Virus record (IMG/VR): IMGVR_UViG_3300024252_000004
Span: 124,001-188,000 of that record
Direction: 5' to 3' (one strand)
Length of the DNA stretch: 64,000 nt
Shown: in pieces, positions 17,851 through 35,305 of the stretch
How positions within the stretch are numbered: the first letter of the stretch is position 1
Layout: each line of letters starts with the position of its first letter
Program-made: the position numbers and the translations under genes
The notes under the pieces: model-generated
Seen by the model: only the letters and a program-made list of their open reading frames with translations
Database searches by the model: none
What the model was told of the DNA's origin: nothing

Positions 17851-17931
17851 TGGGGTGCAAAACCTTTCTAAGTAACTGACAAGGTGTTATAGATGGGTGG
17901 AGCGAAAAACTACACACAACGGGCGGACAGC

Positions 17932-18708
17932 ATGGGTAAGGGTTCACGGGTCGAACTGACCAATATGGTGATCGACGCGGCACTCGCCGCGACTGGACAG
18001 AATGTCAGTTACTCGCGGGACGTGCCCAATGGGTTCGTCTCCGCTACTTTCCCCGACCGTATGGGTCGGGACGGGAACCTGAACCCGGTGGACGGCGGCG
18101 GTAAGCTGTTGATTACTCCGGCGAAAGAGTCGAAGGCCGGGCGCGGTCAGGTGTTCTTTGACGTTCACGGGATTTTCGATGGGCTGGAGATCGGGATTAG
18201 TCTGAAGGTGTCAGACTACATCGGCGACGATCACGCCCCGAGAAACTCCATCATCTCAGGTTCCAAGGCTGAGCACTACTTCGGGATGCATCTTGCGGCG
18301 CAGCGGGGGACGTTGCTCCCGGTGATCCAGTTCTGGCAGGACGCCAGCGGGCAGTGGTGGCGCTGCGCTTTTGACGCAGGCCGCATTCTGCGGGAGCGCC
18401 GCCCGAACCTGACGGTGGGGTGGGATAAGCTGCTCCACTCCGAGATCCCGAACATGGCCGCGTGCGGTCAGCTTGATCGCCTGGAGGCGATCACGGGCGA
18501 GCGTCCGCCCATCGTGGCGCTCGGCGAGGGCGGAGCGATCGCGATCTCGCCGCTCGTGCGGGGGCGCGGGAAATACTGCTACCTGTCGGCGAAGATCAGC
18601 CACGCCCGAACGGGTCACGGGTGGACGCCCGTGGACGCCCCTCGCCTGCCGGAGAGCTACGGCGAACTGTTGGAATGGACCGGAGAGCAGGGTGAGATGA
18701 TCGGCTGA
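17932..18708 (+). CDS. Putative PD-(D/E)xK restriction-endonuclease-like protein
   Basis: FFDVHG...GISLK resembles a D...SxK nuclease active site; the ATG at 17893 overlaps the -10, so ATG 17932 is preferred. Confidence 0.45.
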   Translation: MGKGSRVELTNMVIDAALAATGQNVSYSRDVPNGFVSATFPDRMGRDGNLNPVDGGGKLLITPAKESKAGRGQVFFDVHGIFDGLEIGISLKVSDYIGDDHAPRNSIISGSKAEHYFGMHLAAQRGTLLPVIQFWQDASGQWWRCAFDAGRILRERRPNLTVGWDKLLHSEIPNMAACGQLDRLEAITGERPPIVALGEGGAIAISPLVRGRGKYCYLSAKISHARTGHGWTPVDAPRLPESYGELLEWTGEQGEMIG

Positions 18709-18789
18709 GACAAAGGGGGCTCCGGCCCCCGAACCCCGCCCCGTACCGCTTCGGCGGACGGGGCATTAGGGGCAGGAAAGGAGACGCGC

Positions 18790-19212
18790 ATGGAGCCGCA
18801 CGAGATTGAGGATCTGATTGATATTCCGGCCGCAAAGGCTGAGATCATCCGGCGGCTGGACTGGCGGGGATGGCGACGGCGGCTCTTGATCAAGCGGATG
18901 AACGCTTGCACGACCGCCGATCAGCTTTCGCGGTTCAATTGGAACCGGCTGAACCCTAACCCGGATGATGAGGATCTGATTGGGTGGGTGCTTGATGCGG
19001 CCTTTGATGAGATCAAGCGTGCGAACACGCCTCCCGAGGATCTCACGCGCCGCGTGATTTGGTTCGCGGAAGATGGCAGGACGGTGGAGCGGGTTCGGGA
19101 CATCGATCCGGCTTCACTGTTCACCAAGTCGGGCCAGCCGAACGCACAGGCACGCGATCTGCTTCACGAGATTTTCGGAGCGAGGATCGTCAAGCTCCAG
19201 AGGATGGGTTGA
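18790..19212 (+). CDS. Hypothetical protein
   Basis: GGAG RBS, GC3-rich codons. Confidence 0.75.
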   Translation: MEPHEIEDLIDIPAAKAEIIRRLDWRGWRRRLLIKRMNACTTADQLSRFNWNRLNPNPDDEDLIGWVLDAAFDEIKRANTPPEDLTRRVIWFAEDGRTVERVRDIDPASLFTKSGQPNAQARDLLHEIFGARIVKLQRMG

Positions 19213-19442
19213 TGCGGCATGAAGGATGGATCCCCGTGGGGCAGTTGGTCATTGACCGGATGCCCCTGAACCCGGCTACGCTCTCGTGTGCGAACGCGAT
19301 TCTTGAAGGGGTCGAAATGCCTCCGATCAAGGTCCAGGCGTTGCCCGATGGCCGGTGGAAGGTTCGGGACGGTCGGCACCGTGCGGTCGCGCATAAGCTT
19401 ACGGGCAAGGCGCGAATCCTGGCTAAGTGGGGCACGCGATAG
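19212..19442 (+). CDS. Stand-alone ParB/Sulfiredoxin-like N-terminal domain protein
   Basis: MPPIKV....GRWKVRDGRHRAVAH motif; TGATG coupling to the upstream gene. Confidence 0.7.
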   Translation: MRHEGWIPVGQLVIDRMPLNPATLSCANAILEGVEMPPIKVQALPDGRWKVRDGRHRAVAHKLTGKARILAKWGTR

Positions 19443-19501
19443 TTTTCTCCCCGGCAGGTTGCCAGCCTGCCGGGGAGCGGGGAGAAAAACATTTCAAATG
19501 C

Positions 19502-19538
19502 TGGCACGGGTTTTGCAGAGAATGCAACAACTGTGCCA
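19502..19538. promoter_or_regulatory. Convergent twin sigma54 site palindrome
   Basis: TGGCACGGGTTTTGCA-gagaa-TGCAACAACTGTGCCA. Confidence 0.85.
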
Positions 19539-19639
19539 ACGTGTGAGCGTGTGCCTTTTTTCTCCCTGGGGCTGGGGTGAAAAAGAAAACAACTAAGTAA
19601 CTCACAGGATGTTATATCAAGACACCGGAGGTTCTTCCA

Positions 19640-19936
19640 ATGTTTCTGATCCAGATGCCCAGCGCCGCGCTTCCCGGGCGCATGTGCTACTACGATGGCC
19701 CGGCCGAGAACCCGCAGGTCGCGCCGGTGGAGCCCATGAGACGGGCAACCATGCGGGGGACGGGGTTCGATGATGTTTGGCTCGCGTTGGAGGTCCTTGA
19801 GGACTTTCAGTTCGACGCGAAGCACGCGCCGGCCACGCTGAACATGCTCGGAGGGTACGACTACACCGAGCGGCTCATGAAGGGCTGCATCGTGCTGGCC
19901 TCCGAGGTCGAAGGAGTCGAGGTGACCCAGGGCTGA
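19640..19936 (+). CDS. Hypothetical protein
   Basis: GGAGG RBS directly after a promoter copy. Confidence 0.8.
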   Translation: MFLIQMPSAALPGRMCYYDGPAENPQVAPVEPMRRATMRGTGFDDVWLALEVLEDFQFDAKHAPATLNMLGGYDYTERLMKGCIVLASEVEGVEVTQG

Positions 19937-19942
19937 GCCGGG

Positions 19943-20037
19943 CCCTTTCGGGCCCTCAAGAAAACACCGCTGACCGCCGCCTGTGTCGGCATTCGTTCCT
20001 CCAAGGTCAGCGGTGTTTTCTTGAGGGCCCGAAAGGG
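19943..20037. repeat. Perfect 33-bp inverted repeat with a 29-nt loop
   Basis: CCCTTTCGGGCCCTCAAGAAAACACCGCTGACC (19943-19975) is the exact reverse complement of 20005-20037. Confidence 0.95.
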
Positions 20038-20067
20038 GAGAAAAGATTTTCATTCTTGATAAGGAAC

Positions 20068-20104
20068 TGGCACGGACTTTGCAGTGTATGCAAGGGGCAT
20101 GCCA
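20068..20104. promoter_or_regulatory. Convergent twin sigma54 site palindrome
   Basis: TGGCACGGACTTTGCA-gtgta-TGCAAGGGGCATGCCA, enclosed by the 13-bp IR GGGAGAAAAGATT (20036-20048 / 20107-20119). Confidence 0.85.
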
Positions 20105-20172
20105 TCAATCTTTTCTCCCTGTTGTGAGGGGGTGAAAAGAAAGACACCTAAGTAACTCGTAAGATGTTATAG

Positions 20173-20550
20173 AGGGGTGCCGCGACGGCACTGAGCATGA
20201 CAGCGAGTCGGCGCCGACGACTTCGGCGAACCGACAACGACGAAACTAATAGCGAGAGGCTGAAGTTGACTCACAGACGTGTTCATCGCTGCCCACCGTC
20301 CGGGGCATAAACGGACGGCGGCGAGTAGTCGCTTGCGTGGATACCTTGGGGCCGGCAGTCCTGGGGCAAACTAAACGTAACGATGAAGCACCGGGTGTGA
20401 GGGAACGTGAAGACAGGACTCTGCCGGGTCTGGTCATGACACCTAAAACCCTCCTTTGTGACTCTGAGCATTAACCGGGCGACGGCTCGGTTCTGAGAAA
20501 GCAAAGAACGATTCCCCGTTGGGCAGCAAATGCTGTTGCCCAGCGGGACC
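20173..20550 (+). ncRNA. Putative ~380-nt structured non-coding RNA
   Basis: Follows the promoter copy at 20165; no plus-strand ORF; multiple stems (CCGTCCG/CGGACGG, CCGGCAGTCCTG/CAGGACTCTGCCGG, AACCGGGC/GCTCGGTT) and a 3' hairpin. Confidence 0.6.
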
Positions 20551-20584
20551 TCCGGGGAGAAAAACATTTCAAGCCTCGAAAGGT

Positions 20585-20621
20585 TGGCACGGTTATTGCA
20601 TACACTGCAAATGCCATGCCA
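20585..20621. promoter_or_regulatory. Convergent twin sigma54 site palindrome
   Basis: TGGCACGGTTATTGCA-tacac-TGCAAATGCCATGCCA. Confidence 0.85.
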
Positions 20622-20739
20622 GTTTATATGTTCTTTTTCTCCCCTGGCTGAGAATCTGGGGTGAAAAAGAAAACAACTAAGTAACTCACAGGGTGTTATA
20701 GAAGGACGTGAGAGAAACACCCAAACGGAGCATCCCACC

Positions 20740-21192
20740 ATGTCCGACAAGTTCACCCCCCTCTTCGCCGATGCCGCGCCCAAGCGGCAGACCTTCACCG
20801 AGAAGGTGATGAGCAAGGCGCCCGTGTCCTTCGGCACGGACGACCTCGGGAACCCGGTCGTCGGGGTCGGGATCCCCGGCTACGGTGGCTGCGGGGCGGG
20901 GGGGGCCATGCTGCTGCGGCCGGAGAACATGCAGAACTTCTGCACGGCCATCCGCAACGCCGTCGATGGTGTGGGTCCCGACCCGCTCCAGGTCGCCGTG
21001 GAGACTATGACTCGCACGGGAGAGGGGGAGATCAGCTTCAAGCTGAGCCACATGCCCCGGTCCCAGACGATCACGATGTCGTCCGCCGAGGCCATCGAGT
21101 TCGCAACGCTCGTGGAGCGGATGATCACCGCCTGCGAGAAGAAGGCGCAGGGTCCCGAGACGGACGGCGAGGAGGCGACCGACGGGGAGTGA
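20740..21192 (+). CDS. Hypothetical protein, possible PUR/PC4-like nucleic-acid-binding fold with acidic tail
   Basis: Two beta-rich+helix units and an E/D tail; architecture parallels 32276-32863. Confidence 0.6.
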   Translation: MSDKFTPLFADAAPKRQTFTEKVMSKAPVSFGTDDLGNPVVGVGIPGYGGCGAGGAMLLRPENMQNFCTAIRNAVDGVGPDPLQVAVETMTRTGEGEISFKLSHMPRSQTITMSSAEAIEFATLVERMITACEKKAQGPETDGEEATDGE

Positions 21193-21264
21193 TCTCCGCC
21201 CCGCCCCGGGAGGCTTCGGCCCCCGGGTTCCGGGGAGAAAAGATTTTCATTTTTGATAAGGAAC

Positions 21265-21300
21265 TGGCACAGATATTGCATGTATGCAAGAGTCATTCCA
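21265..21300. promoter_or_regulatory. Convergent twin sigma54 site palindrome (right half degenerate)
   Basis: TGGCACAGATATTGCA-tgta-TGCAAGAGTCATTCCA inside the 14-bp IR GGGGAGAAAAGATT (21232-21245 / 21303-21316). Confidence 0.75.
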
Positions 21301-21417
21301 TCAATCTTTTCTCCCCTGTGTGTGTATGGGGGTGAAAAAGAAAACAACTAAGTAACTTATAAGATGTTATAGAGAGGTGCCCGACAGACCGTGGCACCCA
21401 AACTCTGGAGAAATCGC

Positions 21418-21954
21418 ATGTCCTTCACGCCTCCGCACTCGCACTCCCGCTCCGTCGCTGGCCTCGGACGGCTTCTCGTCGCCGTCATGATCTCCGGCGA
21501 CAAGGCGCTCATCGCCCTCAAGTCGGCGGAGCAGGCTGTGGATGGGGCGCGGACGCGCCTGACCGTGTGGTTCCCCAACGATGAGCAGTGGCCGACCGAC
21601 GCCGAGGACAATCGCGAGGTGATCAGCGCCTTGTCCGTCGCCAACGGGGAGGTGAAGCACGCCCGGCTGATGCTGGACGGCGTCAAGGTCTCGCGGGCCG
21701 CCGGCCTCGACTTCCTGACGAGCCTGCACGAGGAGGTCGCGGCCTGCTCTGACCGCCTGTTCGTCAACCCCTACACCGGGAAGGGCGGAAAGACCTACAT
21801 GGCGTTCTTCGGCGAGGGCGACGACATCGAGCACCGGGGCCAGACCCACCGCGAGTTGCGGGACACCCTCCGCGCGAAGATCAAGAAGGCGGGCCTGGAT
21901 CCGGTGAAGGTCCAGGCGGACCACGGCTACGGCCGAGGGCGTGGCCGGCGCTGA
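21418..21954 (+). CDS. Hypothetical protein
   Basis: GGAG RBS before ATG 21418; strong GC3 codon bias. Confidence 0.8.
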   Translation: MSFTPPHSHSRSVAGLGRLLVAVMISGDKALIALKSAEQAVDGARTRLTVWFPNDEQWPTDAEDNREVISALSVANGEVKHARLMLDGVKVSRAAGLDFLTSLHEEVAACSDRLFVNPYTGKGGKTYMAFFGEGDDIEHRGQTHRELRDTLRAKIKKAGLDPVKVQADHGYGRGRGRR

Positions 21955-22127
21955 GCCGCACCCTGACGGGAGCTTCGGCTCCCCGAAGGGGGAGAAAAAC
22001 ATTGCAGAAGCATATGTGTATGCTTTTTCTCCCCTGTGCGTGTGTGTCGGGGTGAAAAGAAAAACAACTAAGTAACTCATAGGATGTTATTACAAGGTGT
22101 AAGGAACCCAAAAGCGGAGCATTGAAC

Positions 22128-22310
22128 ATGGACACGCCGACCATCATCATCGTGGATCTCTACGGGAAGGACGGGCGACCCGTCCGCACGGGAATCACGT
22201 TCCACAGCAACGACGAGGCGACCGCGAAGGAACAGGCTTCCGAGTTCGCGACACACCACAAGTCGCGGGGGAAGACCGTAAAGGCCCGGCGTCCGAAGAA
22301 GAAGCGTTGA
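22128..22310 (+). CDS. Small basic hypothetical protein
   Basis: GGAG RBS, KKKR C-terminus. Confidence 0.75.
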   Translation: MDTPTIIIVDLYGKDGRPVRTGITFHSNDEATAKEQASEFATHHKSRGKTVKARRPKKKR

Positions 22311-22315
22311 CGCAT

Positions 22316-22406
22316 GTGGGGCCGGGCAGGCGGACGCGGGTTCGATTCCCGCATCAGCCGGTCGCAAGCGATAGCTTGCCGGAGGGTTCGATTCCCTCCC
22401 CCCCAC
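22316..22406 (+). ncRNA. tRNA-like element with two T-arms
   Basis: GCGGG-TTCGATT-CCCGC (22336-22352) and GAGGG-TTCGATT-CCCTC (22382-22398); closing GTGGGG/CCCCAC; internal helix 22322-22331 / 22374-22382; no anticodon arm. Confidence 0.65.
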
Positions 22407-22531
22407 GGGGAGAAAAACATAACACCTTATCAAGATATGAGACTTTTCTCCCCTGCGTGTGCGTGTCGGGGTGAAAAACAATTCAACTAAGTAACTCATA
22501 GGATGTTATTCTAAAGTGTAGGAGGTTCCCG

Positions 22532-22834
22532 ATGCGAGTGCAGAACGACGACGGCATGTTCGAGTTTCAGACGGATTGCCGTCGCTGGCTGTGTATCCAG
22601 ACGACCCGGAAGGGACGGCGGGAGTTTGCTCCCCGTGTCCTCGTGCCGTATGCGTACGCCGGGAGTCTCTCTGCTCAGGCTCGCGCCGAGGGTGCGACCA
22701 GCGCGGACTTCGGAATCGTGGAGCCCAAGGTCAAGAAGCCGCGTGCGCCCAAGGCTCCGCGCAAGCCTCGTCAGCCTCGCAAGGTGAAGGCTCGGATGCC
22801 GGAGGGTTTCGTGCCCCTGGATCTGGGGCTCTGA
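22532..22834 (+). CDS. Hypothetical protein with Lys/Pro/Arg-rich (histone H1-like) tail
   Basis: GGAGG RBS; KVKKPRAPKAPRKPRQPRKVK. Confidence 0.75.
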   Translation: MRVQNDDGMFEFQTDCRRWLCIQTTRKGRREFAPRVLVPYAYAGSLSAQARAEGATSADFGIVEPKVKKPRAPKAPRKPRQPRKVKARMPEGFVPLDLGL

Positions 22835-22906
22835 ACGGCAAAAGGTCCCGATCACCAAGTGATCGGGACCTCCGGGGAGAAAACTTTTGCGTTTATCTTG
22901 ATGAGG

Positions 22907-22943
22907 TGGTATGAATCTTGCAGAGAATGCAAGGGTTGTGCCA
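22907..22943. promoter_or_regulatory. Convergent twin sigma54 site palindrome
   Basis: TGGTATGAATCTTGCA-gagaa-TGCAAGGGTTGTGCCA. Confidence 0.8.
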
Positions 22944-23020
22944 CCCAGGGGAGAAAAGATTCATATGTATATGCTGGGGTGAAAACCTTAGCACACAGGA
23001 AACTGGTAGGGTGTTATAGA

Positions 23021-23710
23021 AGGGTGCCGGAAAGACCCGGCAAACAGATGGATAAGGAGAATCGATAGAGTCTGCGAGAAGTGCGTGTCTCTCTTCTAAA
23101 CGCAACGCTTTGTAGCTCGTAATACCTCAGTCACCACGCAGGCGAATGCGTACCGGTGGTGACAGTTTGCCAGTCCGACGTGAAGAACAGCAGTGGTGGA
23201 TACCGGGAAGGGAAGCGGCAGCACCGTGAATAGCCGACCCGGAAACGCGAAATCGATAGTACAGACTCCCAGTAACGTGATACGCGCCCTTCGGGGAAAG
23301 CTTAACCAGTCTGTCTCGTAAGTGCATGATACCAAAGTGCAGTCCTTTAAGGGATGTAGCAGGCAACCGGAGCCGAGAACACCGAAAGGCAAATCCGGGA
23401 CTGAGGAAATGAGGTCGAAAAAGGATCGAAAGTCTGCGATCACCACCGCCATGGCGGGGTCAATCCAGGCGACGGAATCTAAGCTACTCGGTTAAGCAAC
23501 CTGAGACTAAAGACTTCCGGCGGGACTCTGCCGACATAGATAACTATAGAGGATGGACACGGAAAAGATGGGCTGCCCGGTGCAGACCAAGATGTCCATA
23601 ACATTTGCGCGAAGAGGTAGCTCCTACGAAGGCAAATCCTGTAAAGTTACCGCCCCCCACTCACGCGCCTTTGGCCGGTCATGAGTGGGGGGCGGCTCCT
23701 TTTGTTTTCC
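23021..23710 (+). ncRNA. Putative ~690-nt large structured non-coding RNA
   Basis: Runs from the promoter copy (23012) to a terminator (23650-23710); no credible ORF; long-range helices CCTCAGTC 23125 / GACTGAGG 23399 and GTAGCT 23112 / AGCTAC 23482; UUCG/GAAA tetraloops. Confidence 0.7.
23650..23710 (+). terminator. Intrinsic terminator
   Basis: 14-bp stem CCGCCCCCCACTCA / TGAGTGGGGGGCGG followed by CTCCTTTTGTTTT. Confidence 0.75.
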
Positions 23711-23822
23711 CCGTATGTCAAGCTTTTCTCCCCTGCGTGTGCGTGTCGGGGTGAAAAACAATTCAACTAAGTAACTCATAGGGTGTTATATCAAAGTATA
23801 ACAAAACCAAAGAGCAATCAAG

Positions 23823-24452
23823 ATGACTATCGCCGGTGATAGCCGCGACACGCGGAACCCTCAGAAGTCCTGGGTCGCTTGGACGGCGTCTCTCTGGGCT
23901 CAGAAGATCCTGCGGGCCGAAGTAAATCGTCCCGAGGTAGTGTCTCTCACGGGGGACTATGTCCAGGCGCACATGGAGGAGCTTTTGCCCTTCCATCGTC
24001 GGCATTTCTTCGAGATGGATCCTGTCCAGCTTCGCAAGATGCGGCGGAAGTTCAAGCGGCTCCCTCGCACGTTCACACGGGACGAGATCAGCGACACGAC
24101 CATCCATCAGGGGAACATCTTCAAGACCGACGTAGTTTCGGATGCCGATGGGGCGTATTACGACTGGGACATCACCGGCTCGATTCGTGAGGCCATCAAG
24201 TATGGTCTTGAAGATGCTGTGTGGGACGCTTTTGAGTCTCCGGGGACTCGGTGCATGGCTCTGACGGTTTCCCGTCGGATGCCGGGTGGCAAAGCGAAAA
24301 CGTCGGAGCTTTGGCGGGAGATCGTCAATGGGATCGGCGGAGTGTTCGGAGACTCTCGTGTGTGGGAGTTCGAAGAGCCGATCCACTACGGCCGGGCACG
24401 CCTTGGCTGCGGCAACATGATGCTCATCCGTGCGGTCATCCGCGAGCGGTGA
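23823..24452 (+). CDS. Hypothetical protein (possible class I methyltransferase-like fold)
   Basis: VVSLTG..., FFEMD, IHQGNIF and YYDWD fall at strand ends as in a Rossmann fold; weak call. Confidence 0.55.
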   Translation: MTIAGDSRDTRNPQKSWVAWTASLWAQKILRAEVNRPEVVSLTGDYVQAHMEELLPFHRRHFFEMDPVQLRKMRRKFKRLPRTFTRDEISDTTIHQGNIFKTDVVSDADGAYYDWDITGSIREAIKYGLEDAVWDAFESPGTRCMALTVSRRMPGGKAKTSELWREIVNGIGGVFGDSRVWEFEEPIHYGRARLGCGNMMLIRAVIRER

Positions 24453-24482
24453 AAAGAGCAATAGAAGATGTAAGGGGGCAAA

Positions 24483-24608
24483 GTGGAAATCGTCATCGTC
24501 TGGTACTCTGCGAACGAACGCGAAGACACTCCCGTGGAGGGGTTCTACCGATGGGATGATTCCCATTGTGGCGACAGCCTTTCCTTCGTCGGGACGGAGC
24601 TTCCATGA
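24483..24608 (+). CDS. Small hypothetical protein (41 aa, not in ORF track)
   Basis: AAGGGGG RBS, GTG start, ATGA overlap with the next gene. Confidence 0.55.
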   Translation: MEIVIVWYSANEREDTPVEGFYRWDDSHCGDSLSFVGTELP

Positions 24609-24919
24609 AAAGTCACGAAAAGTCTGATAGCAAACGCTGGGTGATTCAGCGCTGCGTTCGCTGCGGGCATTGGTGGGACCCGCATGGAATCTGGACAACC
24701 GACTGTCCGGCTCCGACCGAAGCTGCGCAGAGTCTGATGGCAGATCTGCGTGTGCTTGGCATCCGAAGCTCCGCCAAGCAGAATGTGGTGTTCGCATGGC
24801 GTACGAGGCGGGTGAATCCGTGGAATCGTAGGGAGTTCGATGCTCGGCACCAAACGGCCGAGGAAATCGAGAAAGAACTGCGAACCCATCCCACACGTCA
24901 GTCCCTTTACCGGGGCTGA
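24605..24919 (+). CDS. Hypothetical protein with CxxC
   Basis: RCVRCGH motif; translationally coupled start. Confidence 0.65.
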   Translation: MKSHEKSDSKRWVIQRCVRCGHWWDPHGIWTTDCPAPTEAAQSLMADLRVLGIRSSAKQNVVFAWRTRRVNPWNRREFDARHQTAEEIEKELRTHPTRQSLYRG

Positions 24920-25047
24920 GGTCGGGGAGAAAAGATTGTTATTCTTGTGAAGGTATTCTCCCCGATGCCTAAGCCGGGGTGAAAAACAATTCAACTAAGT
25001 AACTCACAAGATGTTATATCAAAGCGTAACAAAGGGATGAAGAAAGA

Positions 25048-25389
25048 ATGGGAACGGACCTGAACAAACTCCTTTCGGAGTGTGACGTTGAAACCTACGC
25101 TGCTTCGCGCGGTTCGGGTGGACAGAACGTCAACAAACGGGATACGGCGGTGCGTCTGACGCATCGTCCCACCGGAATCAAAGCCGGTTCCCGTTCCCAT
25201 TCCACGCAGGGACGGAATAAGAGCGAAGCGCTCAAACGTCTGGCAAAGAAGATCGCTCAGGCAAACGAGGTCAAGGCGGAGCGGTTGCCCACGGGAATCC
25301 CGCAGTCCGTCAAGGAAAAACGATTGTCTGATAAGCGTCGGACTTCTGCACGAAAGACCGGACGGAAGCCCGTCCGATCGGAGGACTGA
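25048..25389 (+). CDS. ArfB/PrfH-like GGQ peptidyl-tRNA hydrolase (stalled-ribosome rescue)
   Basis: SRGSGGQNVNKRDTAVRLTH.PTGI...Q.RNK..AL..L plus basic tail KRL.DKRR.S.RK..R. Confidence 0.88.
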   Translation: MGTDLNKLLSECDVETYAASRGSGGQNVNKRDTAVRLTHRPTGIKAGSRSHSTQGRNKSEALKRLAKKIAQANEVKAERLPTGIPQSVKEKRLSDKRRTSARKTGRKPVRSED

Positions 25390-25391
25390 TC

Positions 25392-25601
25392 ATGGGCAAG
25401 AAAGAACCCCTGATTGAGACGGCGGAATGCTGGTGCGGTAAAACTGTAACGTGTTCGTCAGAGGATTTCGGAAAGCCTGACGTGGTAGTCCCCGGATGGG
25501 TTTCTTGGAAGCCTATCAAGAAAGAATGTTCGTGCGGAGAGTCTCTGATCTTCGGAATGGACTTCGACAAGTTTCTGAACCTCTTTGAGGTGGAGTACTG
25601 A
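25392..25601 (+). CDS. Small Cys-rich (zinc-finger-like) protein
   Basis: ECWCG...ECSCG; GAGGA RBS. Confidence 0.7.
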   Translation: MGKKEPLIETAECWCGKTVTCSSEDFGKPDVVVPGWVSWKPIKKECSCGESLIFGMDFDKFLNLFEVEY

Positions 25602-25787
25602 ATGGTGTTCTACTACCTGATGTCTCGCGGCATCTTCGCTGGCCTGATGGCCTATGGCTACGCCCACTACGAGAGCGAGATCTGGATCTGGGCAGGACTC
25701 GTCGCGCTGGTGCCTTTCTTGGGCGAAATCGTGATGATCGGGTTCCTCGTTTTCACGATGTTCTTTCTGTTGGGGTCTTTCGCATGA
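25602..25787 (+). CDS. Small membrane protein
   Basis: Two hydrophobic segments; GGAG RBS. Confidence 0.7.
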   Translation: MVFYYLMSRGIFAGLMAYGYAHYESEIWIWAGLVALVPFLGEIVMIGFLVFTMFFLLGSFA

Positions 25788-26170
25788 AGTACGGACTTTC
25801 TCTCTCTTTCTGTGTGCGTGCGATCATTGATCGCGAGATCACTCTCTTCGAGATCGCTGGCATCATCTCTGCGACAAAGATGGAGTCGCCGGAGGAAGCG
25901 TACGAGCAGTACGGAAAGAGCTACTGGTCTGAGGCGTCAGAAGATGATGTGATGGTGGTCCTTCGGGAACTCTGGCCCCGAGTGATTCAGCCACGCATGT
26001 ACGGTCTTCCGCACCACAATATCTCCAAGGGAATCTGGTTGGAGGTTGCGCATGACCGGCTCCCGGTGCTCATCGAGGCGCGGCACTGTGCCTACTGGAT
26101 GGAGGGAACTGGTAACGAGCCCGCCATCGGTATGATTCGAAACGGTGGACTCTGGAAGTTTCTGGCCTGA
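25784..26170 (+). CDS. Hypothetical protein
   Basis: ATGA coupling, 128 aa. Confidence 0.75.
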   Translation: MKYGLSLSFCVRAIIDREITLFEIAGIISATKMESPEEAYEQYGKSYWSEASEDDVMVVLRELWPRVIQPRMYGLPHHNISKGIWLEVAHDRLPVLIEARHCAYWMEGTGNEPAIGMIRNGGLWKFLA

Positions 26171-26327
26171 GCCTACGCCGAGCCTCCAATCAAGGAGGCT
26201 CGGTCGGGGAGAAAAGATAATCATTCTTGTGAAGGTATTCTCCCCGAAGCACAGATAGGGGGTGAAAAACAATTCAACTAAGTAACTCATAAGATGTTAT
26301 AGAGAGGCACAGAATCGGGAGCAGAGA

Positions 26328-26843
26328 ATGGATATTCTTTCGAAAGTCGGCATGGTGGTTGGGGTGACTGCGCTTTGCGCTTCGCTCTACTCTGCTTACT
26401 CTCACTTCTACGATGGGAAAACCGTCCCCGAGAAGCTCCCGATGGTGGGGCAGGCTTGGTGGGTGGAAGGAAAGGGGACCGTTCTGGTCGCAGAAGTCTA
26501 CCCTGCGGAAGATCGGATCGTCTACAAGACCAAGAACCACAAGGGTGGATGGTCGGACGATCTGACTACTGAGTCTACTCTCGGGCAGTTCATGAACTAC
26601 TCTCGGGTCAACAAGAAGATGACGACTCACGAGTCCGCTCCTGAGAAGAAGGATCGGCGTCCGATGGTGGGTCAGATCTGGGAAGTCGCCGGCTTCGGTG
26701 ATGTGCGAGTCCTTTACTGCGACGGCTACTCCGTTAGCTACAGCTACAAACTGGATCCGTGGAGAAATGAGTCGAGTGAGACTACGGATCTCGAACTGTT
26801 CTACCACTACGGAAACGTCAAGAAAGAGAAGGAGGCCAAGTGA
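26328..26843 (+). CDS. Membrane-anchored protein with two internal repeats
   Basis: N-terminal hydrophobic helix; PMVGQAWWVEGKGTV / PMVGQIWEVAGFGDV repeat. Confidence 0.8.
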   Translation: MDILSKVGMVVGVTALCASLYSAYSHFYDGKTVPEKLPMVGQAWWVEGKGTVLVAEVYPAEDRIVYKTKNHKGGWSDDLTTESTLGQFMNYSRVNKKMTTHESAPEKKDRRPMVGQIWEVAGFGDVRVLYCDGYSVSYSYKLDPWRNESSETTDLELFYHYGNVKKEKEAK

Positions 26844-27169
26844 GTCTACCGAAGCTTCGCATTGGCAACATCGTCCACTGGAATGGCAATCCTTGGGGCG
26901 GAAAGGTTATCTCGAATGGATACGATCTGAATGGAGGGCTCGGGTTCTACTGTATCATCAAGGCTCCCCTTCAGCCCGTGCGCAGGGGTGGGCGTCCGCT
27001 CTGGCTGATCTTCGAAGACGGAACGGTGAGCCCTTCGCTGGGGGATTCCGAGCCTCTCATGTCCCTGCGTGTGAACGGTATCCCTTACCCTCTCGTCATC
27101 GAGGGAGAACTGGAGACGTACACGTTCGAAGGCGAGGGTGAACTCAAGTTCCTTCTGGAAACCCTGTAA
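26840..27169 (+). CDS. Hypothetical protein
   Basis: GGAGG RBS, GTGA coupling. Confidence 0.75.
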   Translation: MSLPKLRIGNIVHWNGNPWGGKVISNGYDLNGGLGFYCIIKAPLQPVRRGGRPLWLIFEDGTVSPSLGDSEPLMSLRVNGIPYPLVIEGELETYTFEGEGELKFLLETL

Positions 27170-27193
27170 ACTTCTCAAACCCGCGAGTAACTG

Positions 27194-27370
27194 ATGCTTA
27201 GGCTTCTTTGGGCCCTTGTCAAATGGGGCATCTTCAGTTGGATGATCGATGTCAGAGCTTTCGGCTGGCACATTTTCCCCAGGGAATGGTGTGCTTGGGC
27301 TGAATGCACTTCGAAAGAGTGTTTGGCTCTGGATGACTTCGATGCAGCTATCTTTCGGCTCAAGGGCTGA
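27194..27370 (+). CDS. Small hypothetical protein (58 aa, not in ORF track)
   Basis: MLRLLWALVKWG...RLKG, ends at the cassette boundary. Confidence 0.5.
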   Translation: MLRLLWALVKWGIFSWMIDVRAFGWHIFPREWCAWAECTSKECLALDDFDAAIFRLKG

Positions 27371-27459
27371 AGGACGGGGAGAAAAGATTGGAGGGTGAAA
27401 AAGAAAACACACAGGAAACTTATAAGATGTTATATGAGGTTGTATTCTCCGGAGACAAT

Positions 27460-27771
27460 GTGATTCCCAACAGCAACATCCCGTCCTACGCAATCCCCTT
27501 CCACATCGGCGTCTGCGGTCTGATCATCGCCTGGGCCCTCGGCGTTGAGGCTGCCAAGTTCATCACGGAGGCCGTGATCACGCTGATCGGTGCGCCGATC
27601 CACTTCGCCCTGTGGACTTTCGATGCTGCGATCGACGCGGTCTACCTGAACGGCTACGAGTACGACCATCCGGTCGATGTCAATGAGCGTGCTGCGTTCG
27701 CTGTCGCGTCCGGTCACAGTGGGTTCGCCCACCGGCCGAGTTCTCATATCAGCGGATGGCGAGGCTACTGA
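27460..27771 (+). CDS. Membrane protein
   Basis: GTG after GGAG, downstream of a promoter copy; hydrophobic helices. Confidence 0.7.
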   Translation: MIPNSNIPSYAIPFHIGVCGLIIAWALGVEAAKFITEAVITLIGAPIHFALWTFDAAIDAVYLNGYEYDHPVDVNERAAFAVASGHSGFAHRPSSHISGWRGY

Positions 27772-27902
27772 GCCTCTCCCGCTCCGGCTGCGGCCGGAGA
27801 TTGGGGAGAAAAGATAAGCATCCTTGTCAAGGAGTGAAAACCTTAACCCCCAAGAAACTCATAAGATGTTATAGAATGACACCAAAAGATATCGAGGAAA
27901 CC

Positions 27903-28346
27903 ATGAAGTCTCTGCTCAACAGTCTGAACAAGTCTCTCCCTTCGATCATGGGATCGAAGAACCAGACGATGATCGATGCTGCTGTGCTGCTCAAGGCATC
28001 GATCACCGATCAGATCAACGGCGGTGGCCCGAAGGGCTGGGTCTGGCAGGAGACCGTGAGCGACAGCTTCGTCGCCCTCGATCTTCACCATCCTCAGCGC
28101 GGAAAGATCCGGGTCTTCTCGGCTTCGGAAGCGTGCTGGGACTGGCGACAGTATCTCGGTCGCGGCTACAACATGGGCACCGTTAAGCTGCCAAATGGCG
28201 GGAACGAGCCTGTCGGACAGTACCGGAATTTCAAGACGGGATTTCGGAACATCGTTCAGATCGCGAAGATCCGGTGGGGATCCATCACGGTCGCGGACGA
28301 GAAGCGGAAGGTCAACGACCTCAAGGGGAAATTCCATTGGGGCTGA
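27903..28346 (+). CDS. Hypothetical protein
   Basis: GAGG RBS before ATG 27903 (alternative ATG 27876). Confidence 0.75.
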   Translation: MKSLLNSLNKSLPSIMGSKNQTMIDAAVLLKASITDQINGGGPKGWVWQETVSDSFVALDLHHPQRGKIRVFSASEACWDWRQYLGRGYNMGTVKLPNGGNEPVGQYRNFKTGFRNIVQIAKIRWGSITVADEKRKVNDLKGKFHWG

Positions 28347-28561
28347 ACGAACCGAAGTTCAAGACCTACGACGAGCGGAACCGTGCAGGCTGCTGTGCGC
28401 GGGGAAGCTGCGAAGAAAAGCTGTGTCCTGATGACACATGGATCAACAGCCTGAACAACAACAAGTACTGCGGTCCCTGCAAGGACTTCTTTTACTTTAG
28501 GCATGACCGATTCGCGACCGGAAAGATCCAGAGAAAGTGGACCCTCATGCCTTCGGGCTGA
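28337..28561 (+). CDS. Small Cys-rich hypothetical protein
   Basis: CC..C...C...C..C pattern; start uncertain (TTG). Confidence 0.5.
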   Translation: MGLNEPKFKTYDERNRAGCCARGSCEEKLCPDDTWINSLNNNKYCGPCKDFFYFRHDRFATGKIQRKWTLMPSG

Positions 28562-28609
28562 GGGGATTCACCCTGTCGGGGAGAAAAGATATACATTCTT
28601 GATAAGGAT

Positions 28610-28646
28610 TGGTACGGTTCTTGCACACACTGCAAGACCTATGCCA
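28610..28646. promoter_or_regulatory. Convergent twin sigma54 site palindrome
   Basis: TGGTACGGTTCTTGCA-cacac-TGCAAGACCTATGCCA. Confidence 0.8.
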
Positions 28647-28749
28647 TATAGCCTTTTGCCTATGCCCACCGGGGAGAAAAACTATTCATGTAAGTAACTC
28701 ATAGGGTGTTATATCAGGCCGTGAGAGCAACCTACCCGGAGAGTGCAGC

Positions 28750-29073
28750 ATGGCCCGACCGACCTACTTCCTGATCGATGACGATTCGCTGGAGACCTAC
28801 ACGACCCTGGACGCGGAGGATCTCGACAACTGGGCTGTTCTGGTGAACGGTGCCATCGTCTCCATCGAGGCGGACGAGGAGGACTGTGAGATCCGCATCG
28901 CTGAGATCAATCGGGAGGGTGACAACCTGACCAACGATCTGGGCTTCGGTGCCGAAACGCAGTGCGACGACGGCGACGACGCCGACGACGACCAGGGCGG
29001 AGTCTGGGGCGACTTCGACAACACGGTCGGTGCGGGCGAGTGGGCCGACAAGGCCGTCCAGAAGTCCTGGTGA
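28750..29073 (+). CDS. Very acidic hypothetical protein (possible DNA mimic)
   Basis: D/E-dominated 107 aa; GGAG RBS. Confidence 0.75.
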   Translation: MARPTYFLIDDDSLETYTTLDAEDLDNWAVLVNGAIVSIEADEEDCEIRIAEINREGDNLTNDLGFGAETQCDDGDDADDDQGGVWGDFDNTVGAGEWADKAVQKSW

Positions 29074-29363
29074 GTCGCCGTCTCGCAATCGTCCTCGATC
29101 CCGACAATAGCGATCCGGCCTGGGGTGCGGCTGAGGAGGCCGCCTTCCGGCGGTTCACCGACGAAAGCCACTACCCGGAGTCAGCCGAGGGCAATCCTGT
29201 TCCGGTTCTGGAAGGGGAGAGGATCCCGATCTACGATCTGATCGAGGCCGCCCGAGCCCTGGTGGACTGTGCCGATCACACCGGCTGTACCCCTGACCTC
29301 GCAGTTGTGGATTCCGATCCACTTTTCAAGCTCAAGCGTGTCCTCGACAGCATCGGAGAATGA
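29070..29363 (+). CDS. Hypothetical protein
   Basis: GTGA coupling; GC3-rich frame. Confidence 0.7.
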   Translation: MSRRLAIVLDPDNSDPAWGAAEEAAFRRFTDESHYPESAEGNPVPVLEGERIPIYDLIEAARALVDCADHTGCTPDLAVVDSDPLFKLKRVLDSIGE

Positions 29364-29890
29364 CAGTGATCCCCTTCGTCTCGCATCCATCGGGGAATGA
29401 CATGAGCGCCCCAGAAATCGATTGGGACAACCAAGACCTGATCTCGAAGTTCATGCTTGACATGGATTCCGGAAATGTCCTGATTTCTTTCGCCGCGAAC
29501 CTGAGCATGGCAACTGCCCATATCGCTCCGGAAAACTTCTCTGCGTTCGTGGACGCATACGAGAAGCTTGCGGCGATGGATCCCAGTGAGCTTCAGGGGA
29601 ATGAGGTTGCCGTATGGCAGGACGGGAAGGTCGTTCAGGTGGTGGGATTCCCTGACCTGAAGCCCACGGACTGGTACATCGAAGCGATGCTGGCAACGGC
29701 GTACATCAAGTTTCGCGACGGAAAGGGGATGTTCGAAGATCGTACCCGCCTCATGTGGCATGGTCCGATTGGCACCCGTGGAACCTTCCTTGTCGAAACC
29801 TGCAACATCCAGAAGGTGGCCAAGATGCTCCGAGCAGCGATCCCGCTCGTGGCGGCGGCTGTGAAAACCATGAAGGAAGGTACCGAATGA
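29360..29890 (+). CDS. Hypothetical protein
   Basis: ATGA coupling, GGAG RBS. Confidence 0.75.
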   Translation: MTVIPFVSHPSGNDMSAPEIDWDNQDLISKFMLDMDSGNVLISFAANLSMATAHIAPENFSAFVDAYEKLAAMDPSELQGNEVAVWQDGKVVQVVGFPDLKPTDWYIEAMLATAYIKFRDGKGMFEDRTRLMWHGPIGTRGTFLVETCNIQKVAKMLRAAIPLVAAAVKTMKEGTE

Positions 29891-30145
29891 AGCCCCTGAA
29901 AGAAGAGGATGCCCAAGCCATTCTCGCTGCGGCTTACAAGGCTGCGGCGGAAAAAAAAGAACACATGGCCCGTTATCCTCGATGTCTGCAAGGAGCGGGA
30001 AATCGAGTTCGGTTGGGCTTCCATGTTCTCCCTGATGACCGATTTCTTCTACGAAGATGTGCGTGAATGGAGTGAAGGAAACTACGGAAAGGACGCCATC
30101 TATTTCTACGCTCTGATTCCAGAAGACGAAAGCCATTCGGGGTAA
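29887..30145 (+). pseudogene. Frameshifted hypothetical gene (+1 shift at an A8 run)
   Basis: MKPLKEEDAQAILAAAYKAAAEK joins KNTWPVILDVCKEREIEFGW... if one A of 29951-29958 is removed. Confidence 0.65.
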
Positions 30146-30304
30146 GGTCTACGAGGTGGGGGAATAGTCCCCTCCCTCCGGGGAGAAAACTATTACAAAT
30201 TAAGCAATGTTTTTCTCCCCGAGCCAGGAGCGGGGTGAAAAGAAATACACACAAGTAACTCATAGGATGTTATAGAGAGGCGCCTCCAATCATAGAGAGT
30301 CTCA

Positions 30305-30596
30305 ATGAATCGCCTCTTTCGCGTCTTCGTCTTCCTGGCCGCCACCGCCGCCCTTTTCGTCGTTCTTCCGGGGTTCAACCCTTCGACCCTGAACGAGATC
30401 ACGACCAGCGGCCTCGGCACGGTCGCGAAGGGGTTCCCTCGTGCCGGAGGTCTTCAAGCACCCCGGTGCATGTACCTTCGAACCGGCATACACGGATTCG
30501 ATGACGTACAGGGTCAGCTACATCGTGGGAGGACTCGTCTTCGCCTACGTCTTGGGGAAGCTGATCCAGAAGAAGAAGAAGAAGAAGAAGAAGTAG
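30305..30596 (+). pseudogene. Frameshifted membrane protein with poly-Lys tail (+1 shift at TTCCCTC)
   Basis: Removing one C at 30436-30438 gives ...KGFLVPEVFKH...IVGGLVFAYVLGKLIQKKKKKKKK*, with the GC3 bias of neighbouring genes. Confidence 0.65.
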
Positions 30597-30714
30597 GGAG
30601 TCAGGGCTTCGGCCCTCCCTCAGGGGAGAAAAAGATTGCATTATCGATAAGGGGTGAAAACCTTAACACACAGGAAACTCATAAGACGTTATAGAGTGAC
30701 ACATGGAGAGGGTA

Positions 30715-30873
30715 ATGTGGTCATACAGTGAAGCTTCAATCCTCGCATCGCTTCCGCTTTTCGCGGTTGCAATGCTGATTGACTTCGAAGTCTTCGCTGT
30801 CCCAAGAACGACCATCTATCTCCTTCCGCTTATTCCGTTCGTGACGTTTCTGTTCTCCCGAGGTAAATACTGA
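30715..30873 (+). CDS. Small membrane protein (52 aa, not in ORF track)
   Basis: GGAGAGGG RBS, two hydrophobic segments, TGATG coupling. Confidence 0.65.
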   Translation: MWSYSEASILASLPLFAVAMLIDFEVFAVPRTTIYLLPLIPFVTFLFSRGKY

Positions 30874-31637: not shown

Positions 31638-31683
31638 CCACGGGGCTTCGGCCCACCATCTATTCTGCTGAGAGGAGAGAATC

Positions 31684-33616: not shown

Positions 33617-33619
33617 GAA

Positions 33620-35300: not shown

Positions 35301-35305
35301 GTAGA

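What the first reader, a model, noticed from the sequence alone, without database searches (positions are those of the whole stretch)
22316..22406. 91-nt tRNA mimic with two T-arms and no anticodon
Seen: two canonical T-psi-C arms with identical TTCGATT loops (22336-22352, 22382-22398), a closing GTGGGG/CCCCAC helix and a connecting helix. A CCA falls at 22403-22405 and could form a 3' end on a 3-4-bp acceptor-like stem. The 5' GGGGCCG and GGACGCGGGTTCGATTCCCGC resemble tmRNA ends, but there is no tag ORF. Inference: a decoy for tRNA-elbow-recognising factors (anticodon nucleases, RNase P, tRNA-modifying or uncharged-tRNA sensors), or a processing/stability signal at the 3' end of the cassette mRNA.
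Basis: partly seen in the sequence, partly recalled or inferred. Interest (0 to 1): 0.72.

Follow-up and report, generated by a model that had tools for sequence, protein, structure and literature searches.

The report
Orphan double-T-arm tRNA-like 3'UTR element
A marine giant phage carries, just behind one small gene, a 91-base RNA element with two tRNA-type T-arms but no anticodon or CCA end. It sits where neighbouring gene cassettes have a plain hairpin, so it is a real curiosity with no relatives and no shown function.

Summary
The core observation holds. Window 22336-22352 and 22382-22398 are two perfect T-arm hairpins sharing the 13-mer GGGTTCGATTCCC, with a perfect 6-bp hairpin between them. 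ARAGORN and Rfam call no tRNA or tmRNA there. The closing and connecting helices appear in the minimum-energy fold, but they are not beyond chance once the three hairpins are held fixed.

The window comes from a 395-kb seawater jumbo phage with 44 tRNAs and a tmRNA. The element lies in a high-GC island of unknown-function (ORFan) genes built from repeated promoter-plus-hairpin cassettes, similar to T4 PeSLs. It starts 5 nt after the stop codon of a 60-aa ORFan gene. It sits directly before the GGGGAGAAAA spacer motif, where the other cassettes carry a simple GC hairpin.

T-arm 1 plus its 5' flank is a 25-mer found in bacterial genomes only at tmRNA 3' ends. G3·U70, ACCA, a tag ORF and a phage SmpB are all absent.

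No diverged homologue exists. All copies are 100% identical and the population shows no sequence variation, so conservation cannot be tested. Metatranscriptome contigs do not cover the element.

Best reading (about 0.4): a cis-acting tRNA-like module at the mRNA 3' end, for processing or stability. Nearly as likely: an inert tRNA/tmRNA-derived remnant. The decoy idea is untested.

The parts
22070..22092 (+). Phage promoter-like motif AAGTAACTCATAGGATGTTAT-AG that heads the cassette
   Evidence: Exact consensus copy. There are 17 copies in the island and sparse copies elsewhere in the genome, all on the + strand. No sigma-70-like site was found.
22128..22310 (+). 60-aa ORFan gene (P0002) with a basic C-terminal tail; stop codon TGA at 22308-22310
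   Evidence: GC3 is 0.85 and a GGAG Shine-Dalgarno sequence precedes it. There are no Pfam or PHROG hits. Among 5.8 billion proteins only identical copies exist. The only fold look-alikes are small hypothetical phage proteins.
22316..22406 (+). The 91-nt tRNA-like element as a whole (G1 = 22316)
   Evidence: MFE four-way junction, -50.5 kcal/mol, z = -3.84. Unique in its own genome. ARAGORN reports it only at 80% of its threshold, as a mis-threaded type-II cloverleaf at 22315-22406.
22316..22321 (+). 5' strand of the closing (acceptor-like) helix GUGGGG. It pairs with 22401-22406 (CCCCAC). U22315 lies at position -1.
   Evidence: The helix is not beyond chance. Together with the 6-bp T-stem 2 it gives a 12-bp stack, with C22400 bulged (read from the sequence).
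22325..22363 (+). Long arm: 13 bp with three mismatches, tipped by T-arm 1
   Evidence: MFE and centroid structures agree. The lower helices are not beyond chance.
22336..22352 (+). T-arm 1, GCGGG-UUCGAUU-CCCGC. With its 5' flank (22327-22352) it matches a tmRNA 3' region.
22364..22379 (+). Perfect 6-bp hairpin GCAAGC-GAUA-GCUUGC, in the position of a type-II variable arm
22381..22399 (+). T-arm 2, GGAGGG-UUCGAUU-CCCUCC (5-bp core at 22382-22398), directly followed by the acceptor-like 3' strand
   Evidence: It matches the phage tmRNA T-arm at 17 of 18 positions, E = 0.1, which is not significant.
22407..22453 (+). Spacer hairpin GGGGAGAAAA...UUUUCUCCCC, common to the cassettes. G22407 would be the discriminator base.
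   Evidence: It has no U-tail and is not scored as an intrinsic terminator.
22468..22511 (+). GGGGTGAAAAA box and the next cassette's promoter (22489-22511)

Best explanation
The element is a tRNA-like (tRNA/tmRNA top-half-like) structured module in the 3' UTR of one ORFan expression cassette of a marine jumbo phage. It is transcribed from the cassette promoter together with the 60-aa gene. It occupies the slot that a plain GC-rich hairpin fills in the neighbouring cassettes.

Shown: its anatomy and its position.

Inferred:
- It acts in cis on the transcript's 3' end.
- Either it serves as an exonuclease-resistant cap, or it is a processing signal.
- As a processing signal, its T-arm 2 plus acceptor-like 12-bp stack, with U at -1 and G at +1, would be read by RNase P. 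The cut would fall between 22315 and 22316.
- That cut would separate the mRNA from a released RNA of about 91 nt. The released RNA could be modified at the T-loops and possibly CCA-tailed.
- Its sequence probably derives from tRNA/tmRNA gene fragments that arrived with the high-GC DNA of the island.
For: - Position. The element starts 5 nt after the stop codon and ends exactly at GGGGAGAAAA. At least 14 other GGGGAGAAAA sites in the island have a strong simple hairpin ending 0-6 nt upstream.
- Transcription. All 17 island promoters are on the + strand and none lies between the ORF and the element.
- Non-random hairpins. Two perfect T-arms and one perfect hairpin.
- Geometry read from the sequence. 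A 6-bp acceptor-like helix plus a 6-bp T-stem gives the canonical 12-bp stack, with U at -1, G at +1 and a G discriminator.
- The phage invests heavily in tRNA biology: 44 tRNAs, a tmRNA, two PolyA_pol/CCA-type nucleotidyltransferases, two RF-1-domain proteins and an Rnl1-like ligase.
- The cassette architecture matches published promoter-stem-loop (PeSL) cassettes flanking ORFans in T4-type phages (PMC2839356, PMC4122927).
Against: - There is no transcript or end-mapping evidence. No RNA run holds the 381-nt cassette. Metatranscriptome contigs cover other parts of the island but not this one.
- There is no homologue and no population variation, so nothing shows selection on the structure.
- The closing and connecting helices are not beyond chance.
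- There is no encoded CCA, although most of the phage's tRNA genes encode it.
- The function of the plain hairpins in the other cassettes is itself unknown. They lack U-tails.
Confidence: 0.4

Rival explanations
1. The element is an inert remnant. It is a patchwork of tRNA/tmRNA gene fragments (an integration or recombination scar, or a decayed type-II tRNA or tmRNA gene) that came in with the foreign high-GC DNA. It has no function of its own beyond being a stable hairpin cluster.
For: - It is a singleton with no homologue anywhere searched.
- The 25-mer around T-arm 1 is otherwise found only in tmRNA 3' ends.
- Metagenome contigs show tmRNA 3' ends followed within 20-45 nt by a partial second T-arm, the typical look of integration scars (L148, L149, L153, L157, L163).
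- In viral contigs, 42 of 123 double-T-arm hits are a normal tRNA followed by an extra T-arm.
- The island ORFs keep a GC3 up to 0.93 in a 43% GC genome, which suggests recent import.
- Cloverleaf closure is not beyond chance. There is no CCA, no D-arm and no anticodon.
Against: - All three hairpins are perfect: there are no mismatches in 16-17 stem pairs.
- T-arm 1 lacks the acceptor strand and CCA that an att-site remnant would carry.
- There is no integrase and no remainder of a tmRNA nearby.
- The element sits precisely in the functional hairpin slot.
Confidence: 0.3
2. The element is a trans-acting decoy or sponge. Once released, the anticodon-less tRNA mimic would titrate host factors that recognise the T-arm or elbow. 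Candidates are tRNA-targeting defence nucleases, T-loop modification enzymes, RNase P and uncharged-tRNA sensors.
For: - It has two canonical T-loops and no anticodon.
- Other RNAs with two T-arms and an acceptor-like closing helix recur in viral contigs, including conserved families absent from Rfam 15.
- From my own knowledge: phage tRNAs that counter tRNA-cleaving defences are established, for example T5 tRNA against PARIS.
Against: - There is no evidence that the RNA accumulates.
- It is not a member of any of those viral families (best covariance-model score 28.8 bits).
- Known counter-defence tRNAs are functional tRNAs that replace cleaved ones. They are not anticodon-less decoys.
- Cloverleaf closure is statistically unsupported.
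Confidence: 0.15
3. The element is a tmRNA-related regulator. It would be a mini tRNA-like domain that binds host SmpB or otherwise modulates trans-translation, working with the phage's own tmRNA and the ArfB-like RF-1-domain protein in the island.
For: - The tmRNA-type T-arm with its GGAC flank.
- A G-rich 5' end.
- No D-stem, and a long helix in place of an anticodon arm.
- The phage encodes a tmRNA and an RF-1-domain ORF about 2.7 kb downstream at 25048-25389.
Against: - The Rfam tmRNA score is 22.2 bits against a 47-bit threshold, and it covers only the first T-arm and its 5' flank.
- There is G3-C instead of G3·U70, and no ACCA.
- The tmRNA-like T-arm is not the one adjacent to the acceptor helix.
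- The phage has no SmpB gene.
- ARAGORN's tmRNA mode finds nothing.
Confidence: 0.05
4. The element is a non-canonical, D-arm-less type-II tRNA that reads UCG. Arm 1 would be an anticodon arm with loop UU-CGA-UU, serving the UCG-rich island genes.
For: - It is 91 nt long, with a long variable-arm-like hairpin and a G discriminator.
- ARAGORN calls look-alikes in other contigs tRNA-Ser(cga) or tRNA-Leu(caa).
- UCG makes up 22% of Ser codons in the island against 8% in the rest of the genome, and ARAGORN called no phage tRNA-Ser(CGA).
Against: - There is no D-arm.
- The 'anticodon' arm is about 16 layers long, against about 10 in a tRNA.
- Position 37 is U.
- The loop and its adjacent stem pairs are identical to T-arm 2.
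- There is no CCA, although most of the phage's tRNAs encode it.
- It falls below the ARAGORN and Infernal thresholds.
Confidence: 0.03

Closest known systems
tmRNA tRNA-like domain (Rfam RF00023)
   Same: - The sequence CGGACGCGGGUUCGAUUCCCGC is the tmRNA consensus T-arm with its GGAC flank.
- The 25-mer occurs in bacterial genomes only at tmRNA 3' ends.
- It has a G-rich 5' end and no D-stem.
   Different: - It scores far below the gathering score (22.2 bits against 47).
- There is no G3·U70, no ACCA, no tag ORF and no pseudoknots.
- It has a second T-arm.
- The tmRNA-like arm is not next to the acceptor helix.
- The phage has no SmpB.
Type-II (long-variable-arm) tRNAs and phage pseudo-tRNAs
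   Same: - It is 91 nt long, with a T-arm directly followed by an acceptor 3' strand.
- It has a 12-bp acceptor/T stack.
- A hairpin sits in the variable-arm position, and the discriminator is G.
- ARAGORN fits a type-II cloverleaf at relaxed threshold.
   Different: - It has no D-arm and no credible anticodon loop.
- It has no CCA.
- It is not called at default thresholds.
PeSL promoter-stem-loop cassettes of T4-type phages (PMC2839356, PMC4122927)
   Same: This is a context match. The island has a repeated stem-loop plus promoter unit flanking small ORFan genes in a hyperplastic region.
   Different: - The promoter consensus is different (AAGTAACTCATAGGATGTTAT).
- The spacers are more elaborate (GGGGAGAAAA...UUUUCUCCCC with inner palindromes).
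- The phage is a 395-kb jumbo phage of unknown family.
- I know of no published PeSL that contains a tRNA-like element.
3'-end tRNA-like structures processed by RNase P (MALAT1 mascRNA) and 3' TLSs of plant RNA viruses
   Same: A tRNA-like fold sits at the 3' end of a longer transcript. The proposed logic is the same: RNase P or tRNA enzymes act on an mRNA end.
   Different: - Those systems are eukaryotic or belong to RNA viruses.
- Plant viral TLSs end in CCA and are aminoacylated.
- Nothing of this kind is shown here. The comparison is from my own knowledge and is an analogy only.
Other double-T-arm RNAs in viral contigs, including ones next to or inside GOLLD RNA (RF02032)
   Same: Two T-arms 25-45 nt apart, often closed by an acceptor-like helix and lacking CCA. 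Examples:
- L011, L060, L068, L122, L131: a hairpin plus T-arm, twice over.
- L127, L133, L134, L036, L069, L083, L100, L081 (L091 aligns in the core as well): compensatory changes in both T-stems.
- L039 and L074: at GOLLD.
   Different: - There is no sequence homology to this element. The best covariance-model score is 28.8 bits, driven by the T-arms.
- The inter-arm cores differ.
- Many of those elements lie in tRNA arrays, whereas this one is in an mRNA 3' UTR.

Membership tests
tRNA | Detected by ARAGORN or by Rfam RF00005 at default or gathering thresholds | tested here: not met
   The only tRNA called in the window is tRNA-Arg at 35306. The element is fitted only at 80% of the ARAGORN threshold, with mismatched arms.
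tRNA | D-arm and a 7-nt anticodon loop on a 5-bp stem | tested here: not met
   There is no D-stem. The only 7-nt loops are two identical UUCGAUU T-loops. Arm 1 sits on a helix of about 16 layers.
tRNA | T-arm with G53-C61 and a UUCRANN loop next to the acceptor 3' strand | tested here: met
   T-arm 2 at 22381-22399 is followed by CCCCAC, which pairs with GUGGGG.
tRNA | 3' CCA, encoded in most tRNA genes of this phage | tested here: not met
   The acceptor strand is followed by GGGG. Most phage tRNA genes and the tmRNA gene end in an encoded CCA.
tmRNA | Rfam RF00023 gathering score, or an ARAGORN tmRNA call | tested here: not met
   22.2 bits against a 47-bit threshold, as a partial match. 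ARAGORN -m finds nothing.
tmRNA | G3·U70 alanine identity pair and 3' ACCA | tested here: not met
   G3 pairs with C, and there is no ACCA. The phage's own tmRNA has both.
tmRNA | Tag reading frame and pseudoknots | tested here: not met
   The element is only 91 nt and has no such parts.
tmRNA | Conserved GGAC plus T-arm sequence | tested here: met
   CGGACGCGGGUUCGAUUCCCGC aligns to the tmRNA consensus. All genome matches of the 25-mer are tmRNA 3' ends.
Bacterial Y RNA (YrlA) | Rfam RF02553 score, and an Rsr/TROVE partner gene | tested here: not met
   12-13 bits against a 69-bit threshold. The phage genome has no TROVE domain.
Described T-loop-pair RNA families in Rfam 15 (T-large named from memory) | A match to any such family at E <= 10 | tested here: not met
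   The E-value scan of 22250-22470 lists only T-arm-sized fragments of tmRNA, Y RNA and permuted tmRNA. I did not verify that T-large is held in Rfam 15.
PeSL-like regulatory cassette array (context) | A repeated stem-loop plus promoter unit flanking small, mostly ORFan genes | tested here: met
   17 promoter copies lie within about 16 kb, each preceded by the spacer hairpin units. 9 of 10 island proteins have no Pfam or PHROG hit.
RNase P-processed 3' tRNA-like element (mascRNA-type) | RNase P cleavage at the 5' end of the tRNA-like fold, and a discrete small RNA product | not testable with these tools
   No RNA run was listed for the cassette. RNA contigs do not cover it.

The most novel reading that the evidence does not exclude
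The element is one instance of a widespread, undescribed class of phage RNAs. They are tRNA-shaped molecules in which a second T-loop replaces the anticodon, and they lack CCA. They would be made to engage host or phage factors that read the T-arm or elbow (defence nucleases, RNase P, modification enzymes) rather than to decode. Here the element has been co-opted into an mRNA 3' UTR, so that the message releases the mimic when it is processed.
Probability: 0.12. Interest if true: 0.75.

Novelty: new variant of a known kind. Interest (0 to 1): 0.4.

Why it matters
If it is functional, this would be a bacterial-virus example of tRNA-like punctuation of an mRNA 3' end. That device is known from eukaryotic long non-coding RNAs and from RNA viruses. 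I know of no report of it in phage early-gene cassettes.

It would also point to a broader set of phage RNAs with two T-loops that current tRNA finders and Rfam miss, or mislabel as tRNA-Ser(CGA) or tRNA-Leu(CAA).

If it is a remnant, it documents how tRNA/tmRNA fragments travel with imported DNA into the hyperplastic regions of giant phages.

As it stands it is a single orphan sequence with no expression or conservation evidence, so its weight is modest.

Tried and rejected
**Searches for relatives**
- BLAST of the cassette and of 3 kb around it against 50,697 phage records, in near and distant modes: no match.
- Homologues of the upstream 60-aa protein among 5.8 billion proteins: only itself. 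Pfam, PHROGs and the ESM Atlas give no function.
- Pattern scans of viral contigs and metagenome contigs for the two specific T-arms: only identical copies of the same phage.
- Seven independent contigs from JGI and ENA samples are 100% identical over 1-3 kb. There is no population variation to use.
- A promoter-motif scan for relatives of the phage in IMG/VR: only the same phage has multiple copies.
- Covariance model R1 searched against the first 100 of the fetched loci and against the phage's own genome: only weak, T-arm-driven matches (28.8 bits or less) and no paralogue.

**Expression**
- No RNA run was listed for the cassette.
- Three metatranscriptomes hold contigs for 23038-23614 and 20195-20478 but none for 22128-22453. 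Short structured RNAs are poorly captured by such libraries, so this is not evidence of absence.

**Ideas tested and set aside**
- Recent duplication of a phage tRNA or tmRNA: rejected. The best intragenomic match is 17 of 18 nt, E = 0.1.
- Y RNA: rejected. There is no Rsr gene and the score is 12 bits.
- Intrinsic terminator: the cassette hairpins, this one included, lack U-tails.
- Integron attC: considered and dropped. I saw no GTTRRRY core sites when reading the spacers.
- Statistical support for the cloverleaf closure: tested and not found.

Full report
**What is there**

Window 22316-22406 reads GUGGGGCCGGGCAGGCGGAC-GCGGGUUCGAUUCCCGC-AUCAGCCGGUC-GCAAGCGAUAGCUUGC-C-GGAGGGUUCGAUUCCCUCC-C-CCCCAC. 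It contains three perfect hairpins.
- T-arm 1 lies at 22336-22352.
- T-arm 2 lies at 22382-22398 (6 bp if 22381/22399 are included).
- A 6-bp GAUA-loop hairpin lies at 22364-22379.

The two T-arms share the 13-mer GGGTTCGATTCCC and have every sequence hallmark of a T-loop: a G53-C61 closing pair, and U at loop position 1 with A at position 5.

The 91-mer folds as a four-way junction at -50.5 kcal/mol. The MFE equals the centroid, and z = -3.84 against dinucleotide shuffles. The junction consists of:
- a 6-bp closing helix;
- a 13-bp, thrice-mismatched arm tipped by T-loop 1;
- the short hairpin;
- T-arm 2.

The closing helix (6 bp) plus T-stem 2 (6 bp), with C22400 bulged, gives the canonical 12-bp acceptor/T stack. 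U lies at -1, G at +1, and the discriminator is G.

ARAGORN and Rfam at gathering scores call nothing here. At 80% of its threshold ARAGORN fits a mis-threaded type-II cloverleaf over 22315-22406.

**How much is beyond chance**

The 395-kb genome has 55 T-arm hairpins of this definition. 44 lie in called tRNAs or the tmRNA, and most of the other orphans are uncalled tRNA-like genes with CCA. My own calculation expects about two by chance in the whole genome. Two orphans 46 nt apart is therefore not chance.

The rest of the fold is weaker.
- With the three hairpins fixed and the other 40 nt shuffled, 11-16% of shuffles fold at least as well.
- A 6-bp closing helix arises by chance in 7-13% of trials, because the 5' flank is G-rich and the 3' flank is C-rich.

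The cloverleaf is plausible but not demonstrated.

**Where it sits**

The window is G000:C1:124001-188000 of a single 395,127-bp IMG/VR virus record, rated 100% complete. The record comes from seawater metagenomes and is present in more than 20 runs. The genome has about 43% GC, 44 ARAGORN tRNAs and a tmRNA.

Window positions from about 18000 to 36000 form the genome's only high-GC island, at 54-62% GC. The island has these features:
- It holds 17 + strand copies of a 21-nt promoter-like motif, AAGTAACTCATAGGATGTTAT. The motif also occurs sparsely elsewhere in the genome.
- Each copy is preceded by a spacer built from GGGGAGAAAA...UUUUCUCCCC and GGGGUGAAAAA.
- The island genes have GC3 up to 0.93. 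Nine of ten tested have no Pfam or PHROG match.

This is the architecture published for PeSL promoter-stem-loop cassettes in the hyperplastic regions of T4-type phages (PMC2839356, PMC4122927).

At nearly every primary GGGGAGAAAA site, a strong simple GC hairpin ends 0-6 nt upstream. In this one cassette the 91-nt element fills that slot exactly. It begins 5 nt after the TGA of a 60-aa ORFan gene (22128-22310) and ends at G22407. No promoter separates the gene from the element, and no U-tailed terminator follows it.

**Relation to tmRNA and tRNA**

Evidence for a link to tmRNA:
- Rfam's tmRNA model matches GGGG-CCGGGCAGGCGGACGCGGGUUCGAUUCCCGC at 22.2 bits, against a gathering score of 47.
- The 25-mer AGGCGGACGCGGGTTCGATTCCCGC has 10 exact matches in 185,579 species genomes, and all are tmRNA 3' ends.

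T-arm 1 is therefore derived from tmRNA or mimics it.

Evidence against membership of the tmRNA family:
- The flanks differ from tmRNA genes on both sides of the 25-mer.
- G3 pairs with C rather than U, and there is no ACCA.
- There is no tag ORF and no pseudoknot.
- The tmRNA-like arm is not the one adjacent to the acceptor helix.
- The phage has no SmpB.

T-arm 2 resembles the phage's own tmRNA arm only at chance level.

Reading loop 1 as a CGA anticodon is formally possible. UCG is enriched in the island, at 22% of Ser codons against 8% elsewhere. That reading fails on the missing D-arm, the length of the arm, U at position 37 and the missing CCA.

**Comparative evidence**

There is none for this element.
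- The upstream protein has no relative.
- All DNA copies in viral and metagenome collections are the same phage.
- Seven independent contigs are 100% identical over 1-3 kb.
- The promoter motif identifies no related phage.
- The covariance model finds no paralogue and only look-alikes driven by the T-arms.

For expression, no RNA run was listed for the cassette. Contigs of three seawater metatranscriptomes cover other island segments but not this one. That is uninformative for a short structured RNA.

**Wider pattern**

The 123 matches are a mixture.
- 42 are a normal tRNA followed by an extra T-arm.
- 6 are called type-II tRNAs by ARAGORN, which reads UUCGAnU or UUCAAUU as a CGA or CAA anticodon.
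- 75 lie in no called tRNA.

Several elements recur as conserved families with compensatory stem changes, and Rfam 15 did not call two of them. Two elements lie at GOLLD RNAs. The window's element belongs to none of these by sequence, but it shares their design.

Metagenome hits also show tmRNA 3' ends followed by partial T-arm duplicates. That is a route by which tandem T-arms can arise as scars.

**Verdict**

The element is a real, non-random, orphan tRNA/tmRNA-like element.
- The best-supported reading, about 0.4, is a cis-acting module at the 3' end of a PeSL-like cassette transcript. It would act either as a protective cap or as an RNase P-type processing signal that releases a small tRNA-like RNA.
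- An inert remnant of imported tRNA/tmRNA fragments is nearly as likely, about 0.3.
- The decoy idea remains open and untested, about 0.15.
- The tmRNA/SmpB and D-arm-less tRNA-Ser readings are unlikely.

Interest is moderate. The anatomy is unusual, but the element is a singleton with no evidence of expression or conservation.

Noticed in passing
window 22997-23712: A stretch of about 690 nt without a convincing ORF. It follows a variant promoter, AGGAAACTGGTAGGGTGTTAT-AG, and ends in the island's only strong U-tailed terminator (23650-23712). Contigs from three seawater metatranscriptomes cover 23038-23272 and 23310-23614 at 100% identity. Its fold z-score is -2.9. There is no Rfam or phage-database match. 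It is a candidate large phage non-coding RNA.
   Followed up: partly
window 20150-20480: The promoter at 20150 is followed by a segment with only short, low-GC3 ORFs. One metatranscriptome contig covers it at 20195-20478. It is possibly a second non-coding transcript.
   Followed up: no
window 17870-36000: The only high-GC island (54-62%) of a 43% GC, 395-kb phage genome. It holds 17 copies of a 21-nt promoter-like motif and elaborate spacers. The spacers consist of GGGGAGAAAA...UUUUCUCCCC enclosing TGGCA-N6-TTGCA...TGCAA-N6-TGCCA palindromes and a TCTTGATAAGG motif in either orientation, followed by GGGGTGAAAAA. Nearly all genes are ORFans with GC3 up to 0.93. It looks like a PeSL-type hyperplastic region filled with foreign DNA.
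   Followed up: partly
window 25048-25389: An island ORF of 113 aa with a GGQ motif and an RF-1 domain (66 bits). It resembles ArfB or a peptidyl-tRNA hydrolase. A second RF-1-domain gene lies at G000 288520-288846.
   Followed up: partly
G000:C1 208650, 211988, 252305, 293894, 302868, 309967 (outside the window): Orphan T-arms followed by a 7-nt strand, a discriminator and CCA. These are probably tRNA or tRNA-like genes that ARAGORN misses. One looks like a tRNA-Ser(UGA) with an odd D-arm.
   Followed up: partly
G000:C1 302460-302537 and 325213-325615 (outside the window): The phage carries a tRNA with anticodon CTA (amber-suppressor type, labelled Pyl by ARAGORN). It also carries its own tmRNA, with tag DDYSFVYANAGRGFGAPVVAYA, but no SmpB gene.
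   Followed up: no
G000:C1 200710-201102 and 390054-390422 (outside the window): Two PolyA_pol-family (CCA-adding or poly(A) polymerase type) nucleotidyltransferase genes in the phage.
   Followed up: no
L127, L133, L134, L036, L069, L083, L091, L100, L081 (double-T-arm positions as listed): A conserved viral RNA family. It consists of T-arm 1, a small CUCG...CGAG hairpin, a spacer that often contains GAAGGGAG, and T-arm 2. Both T-stems show compensatory changes, and Rfam 15 does not call the family. L081 has a third T-arm upstream.
   Followed up: partly
L011, L060, L068, L122, L131; and L020, L027, L035, L073, L103, L114: Two further recurrent double-T-arm designs in viral contigs. The first is a hairpin plus T-arm, twice over, closed by an A/U-rich helix. 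The second is the 'AGTCAGG...CCTGACT' family of about 90 nt in tRNA arrays. Its first T-like loop (UUCGAnU or UUCAAUU) is read by ARAGORN or Rfam as a Ser(CGA) or Leu(CAA) anticodon, and it lacks CCA.
   Followed up: partly
L039 2171-2681; L074 1923-2362: Double-T-arm tRNA-like elements lie immediately after (L039) or inside (L074) GOLLD RNA matches of 254 and 203 bits.
   Followed up: no
L148, L149, L163, L153, L157 (metagenome contigs): tmRNA 3' ends followed within 20-45 nt by a second, partial tmRNA-type T-arm and acceptor. This looks like integration scars at ssrA.
   Followed up: no
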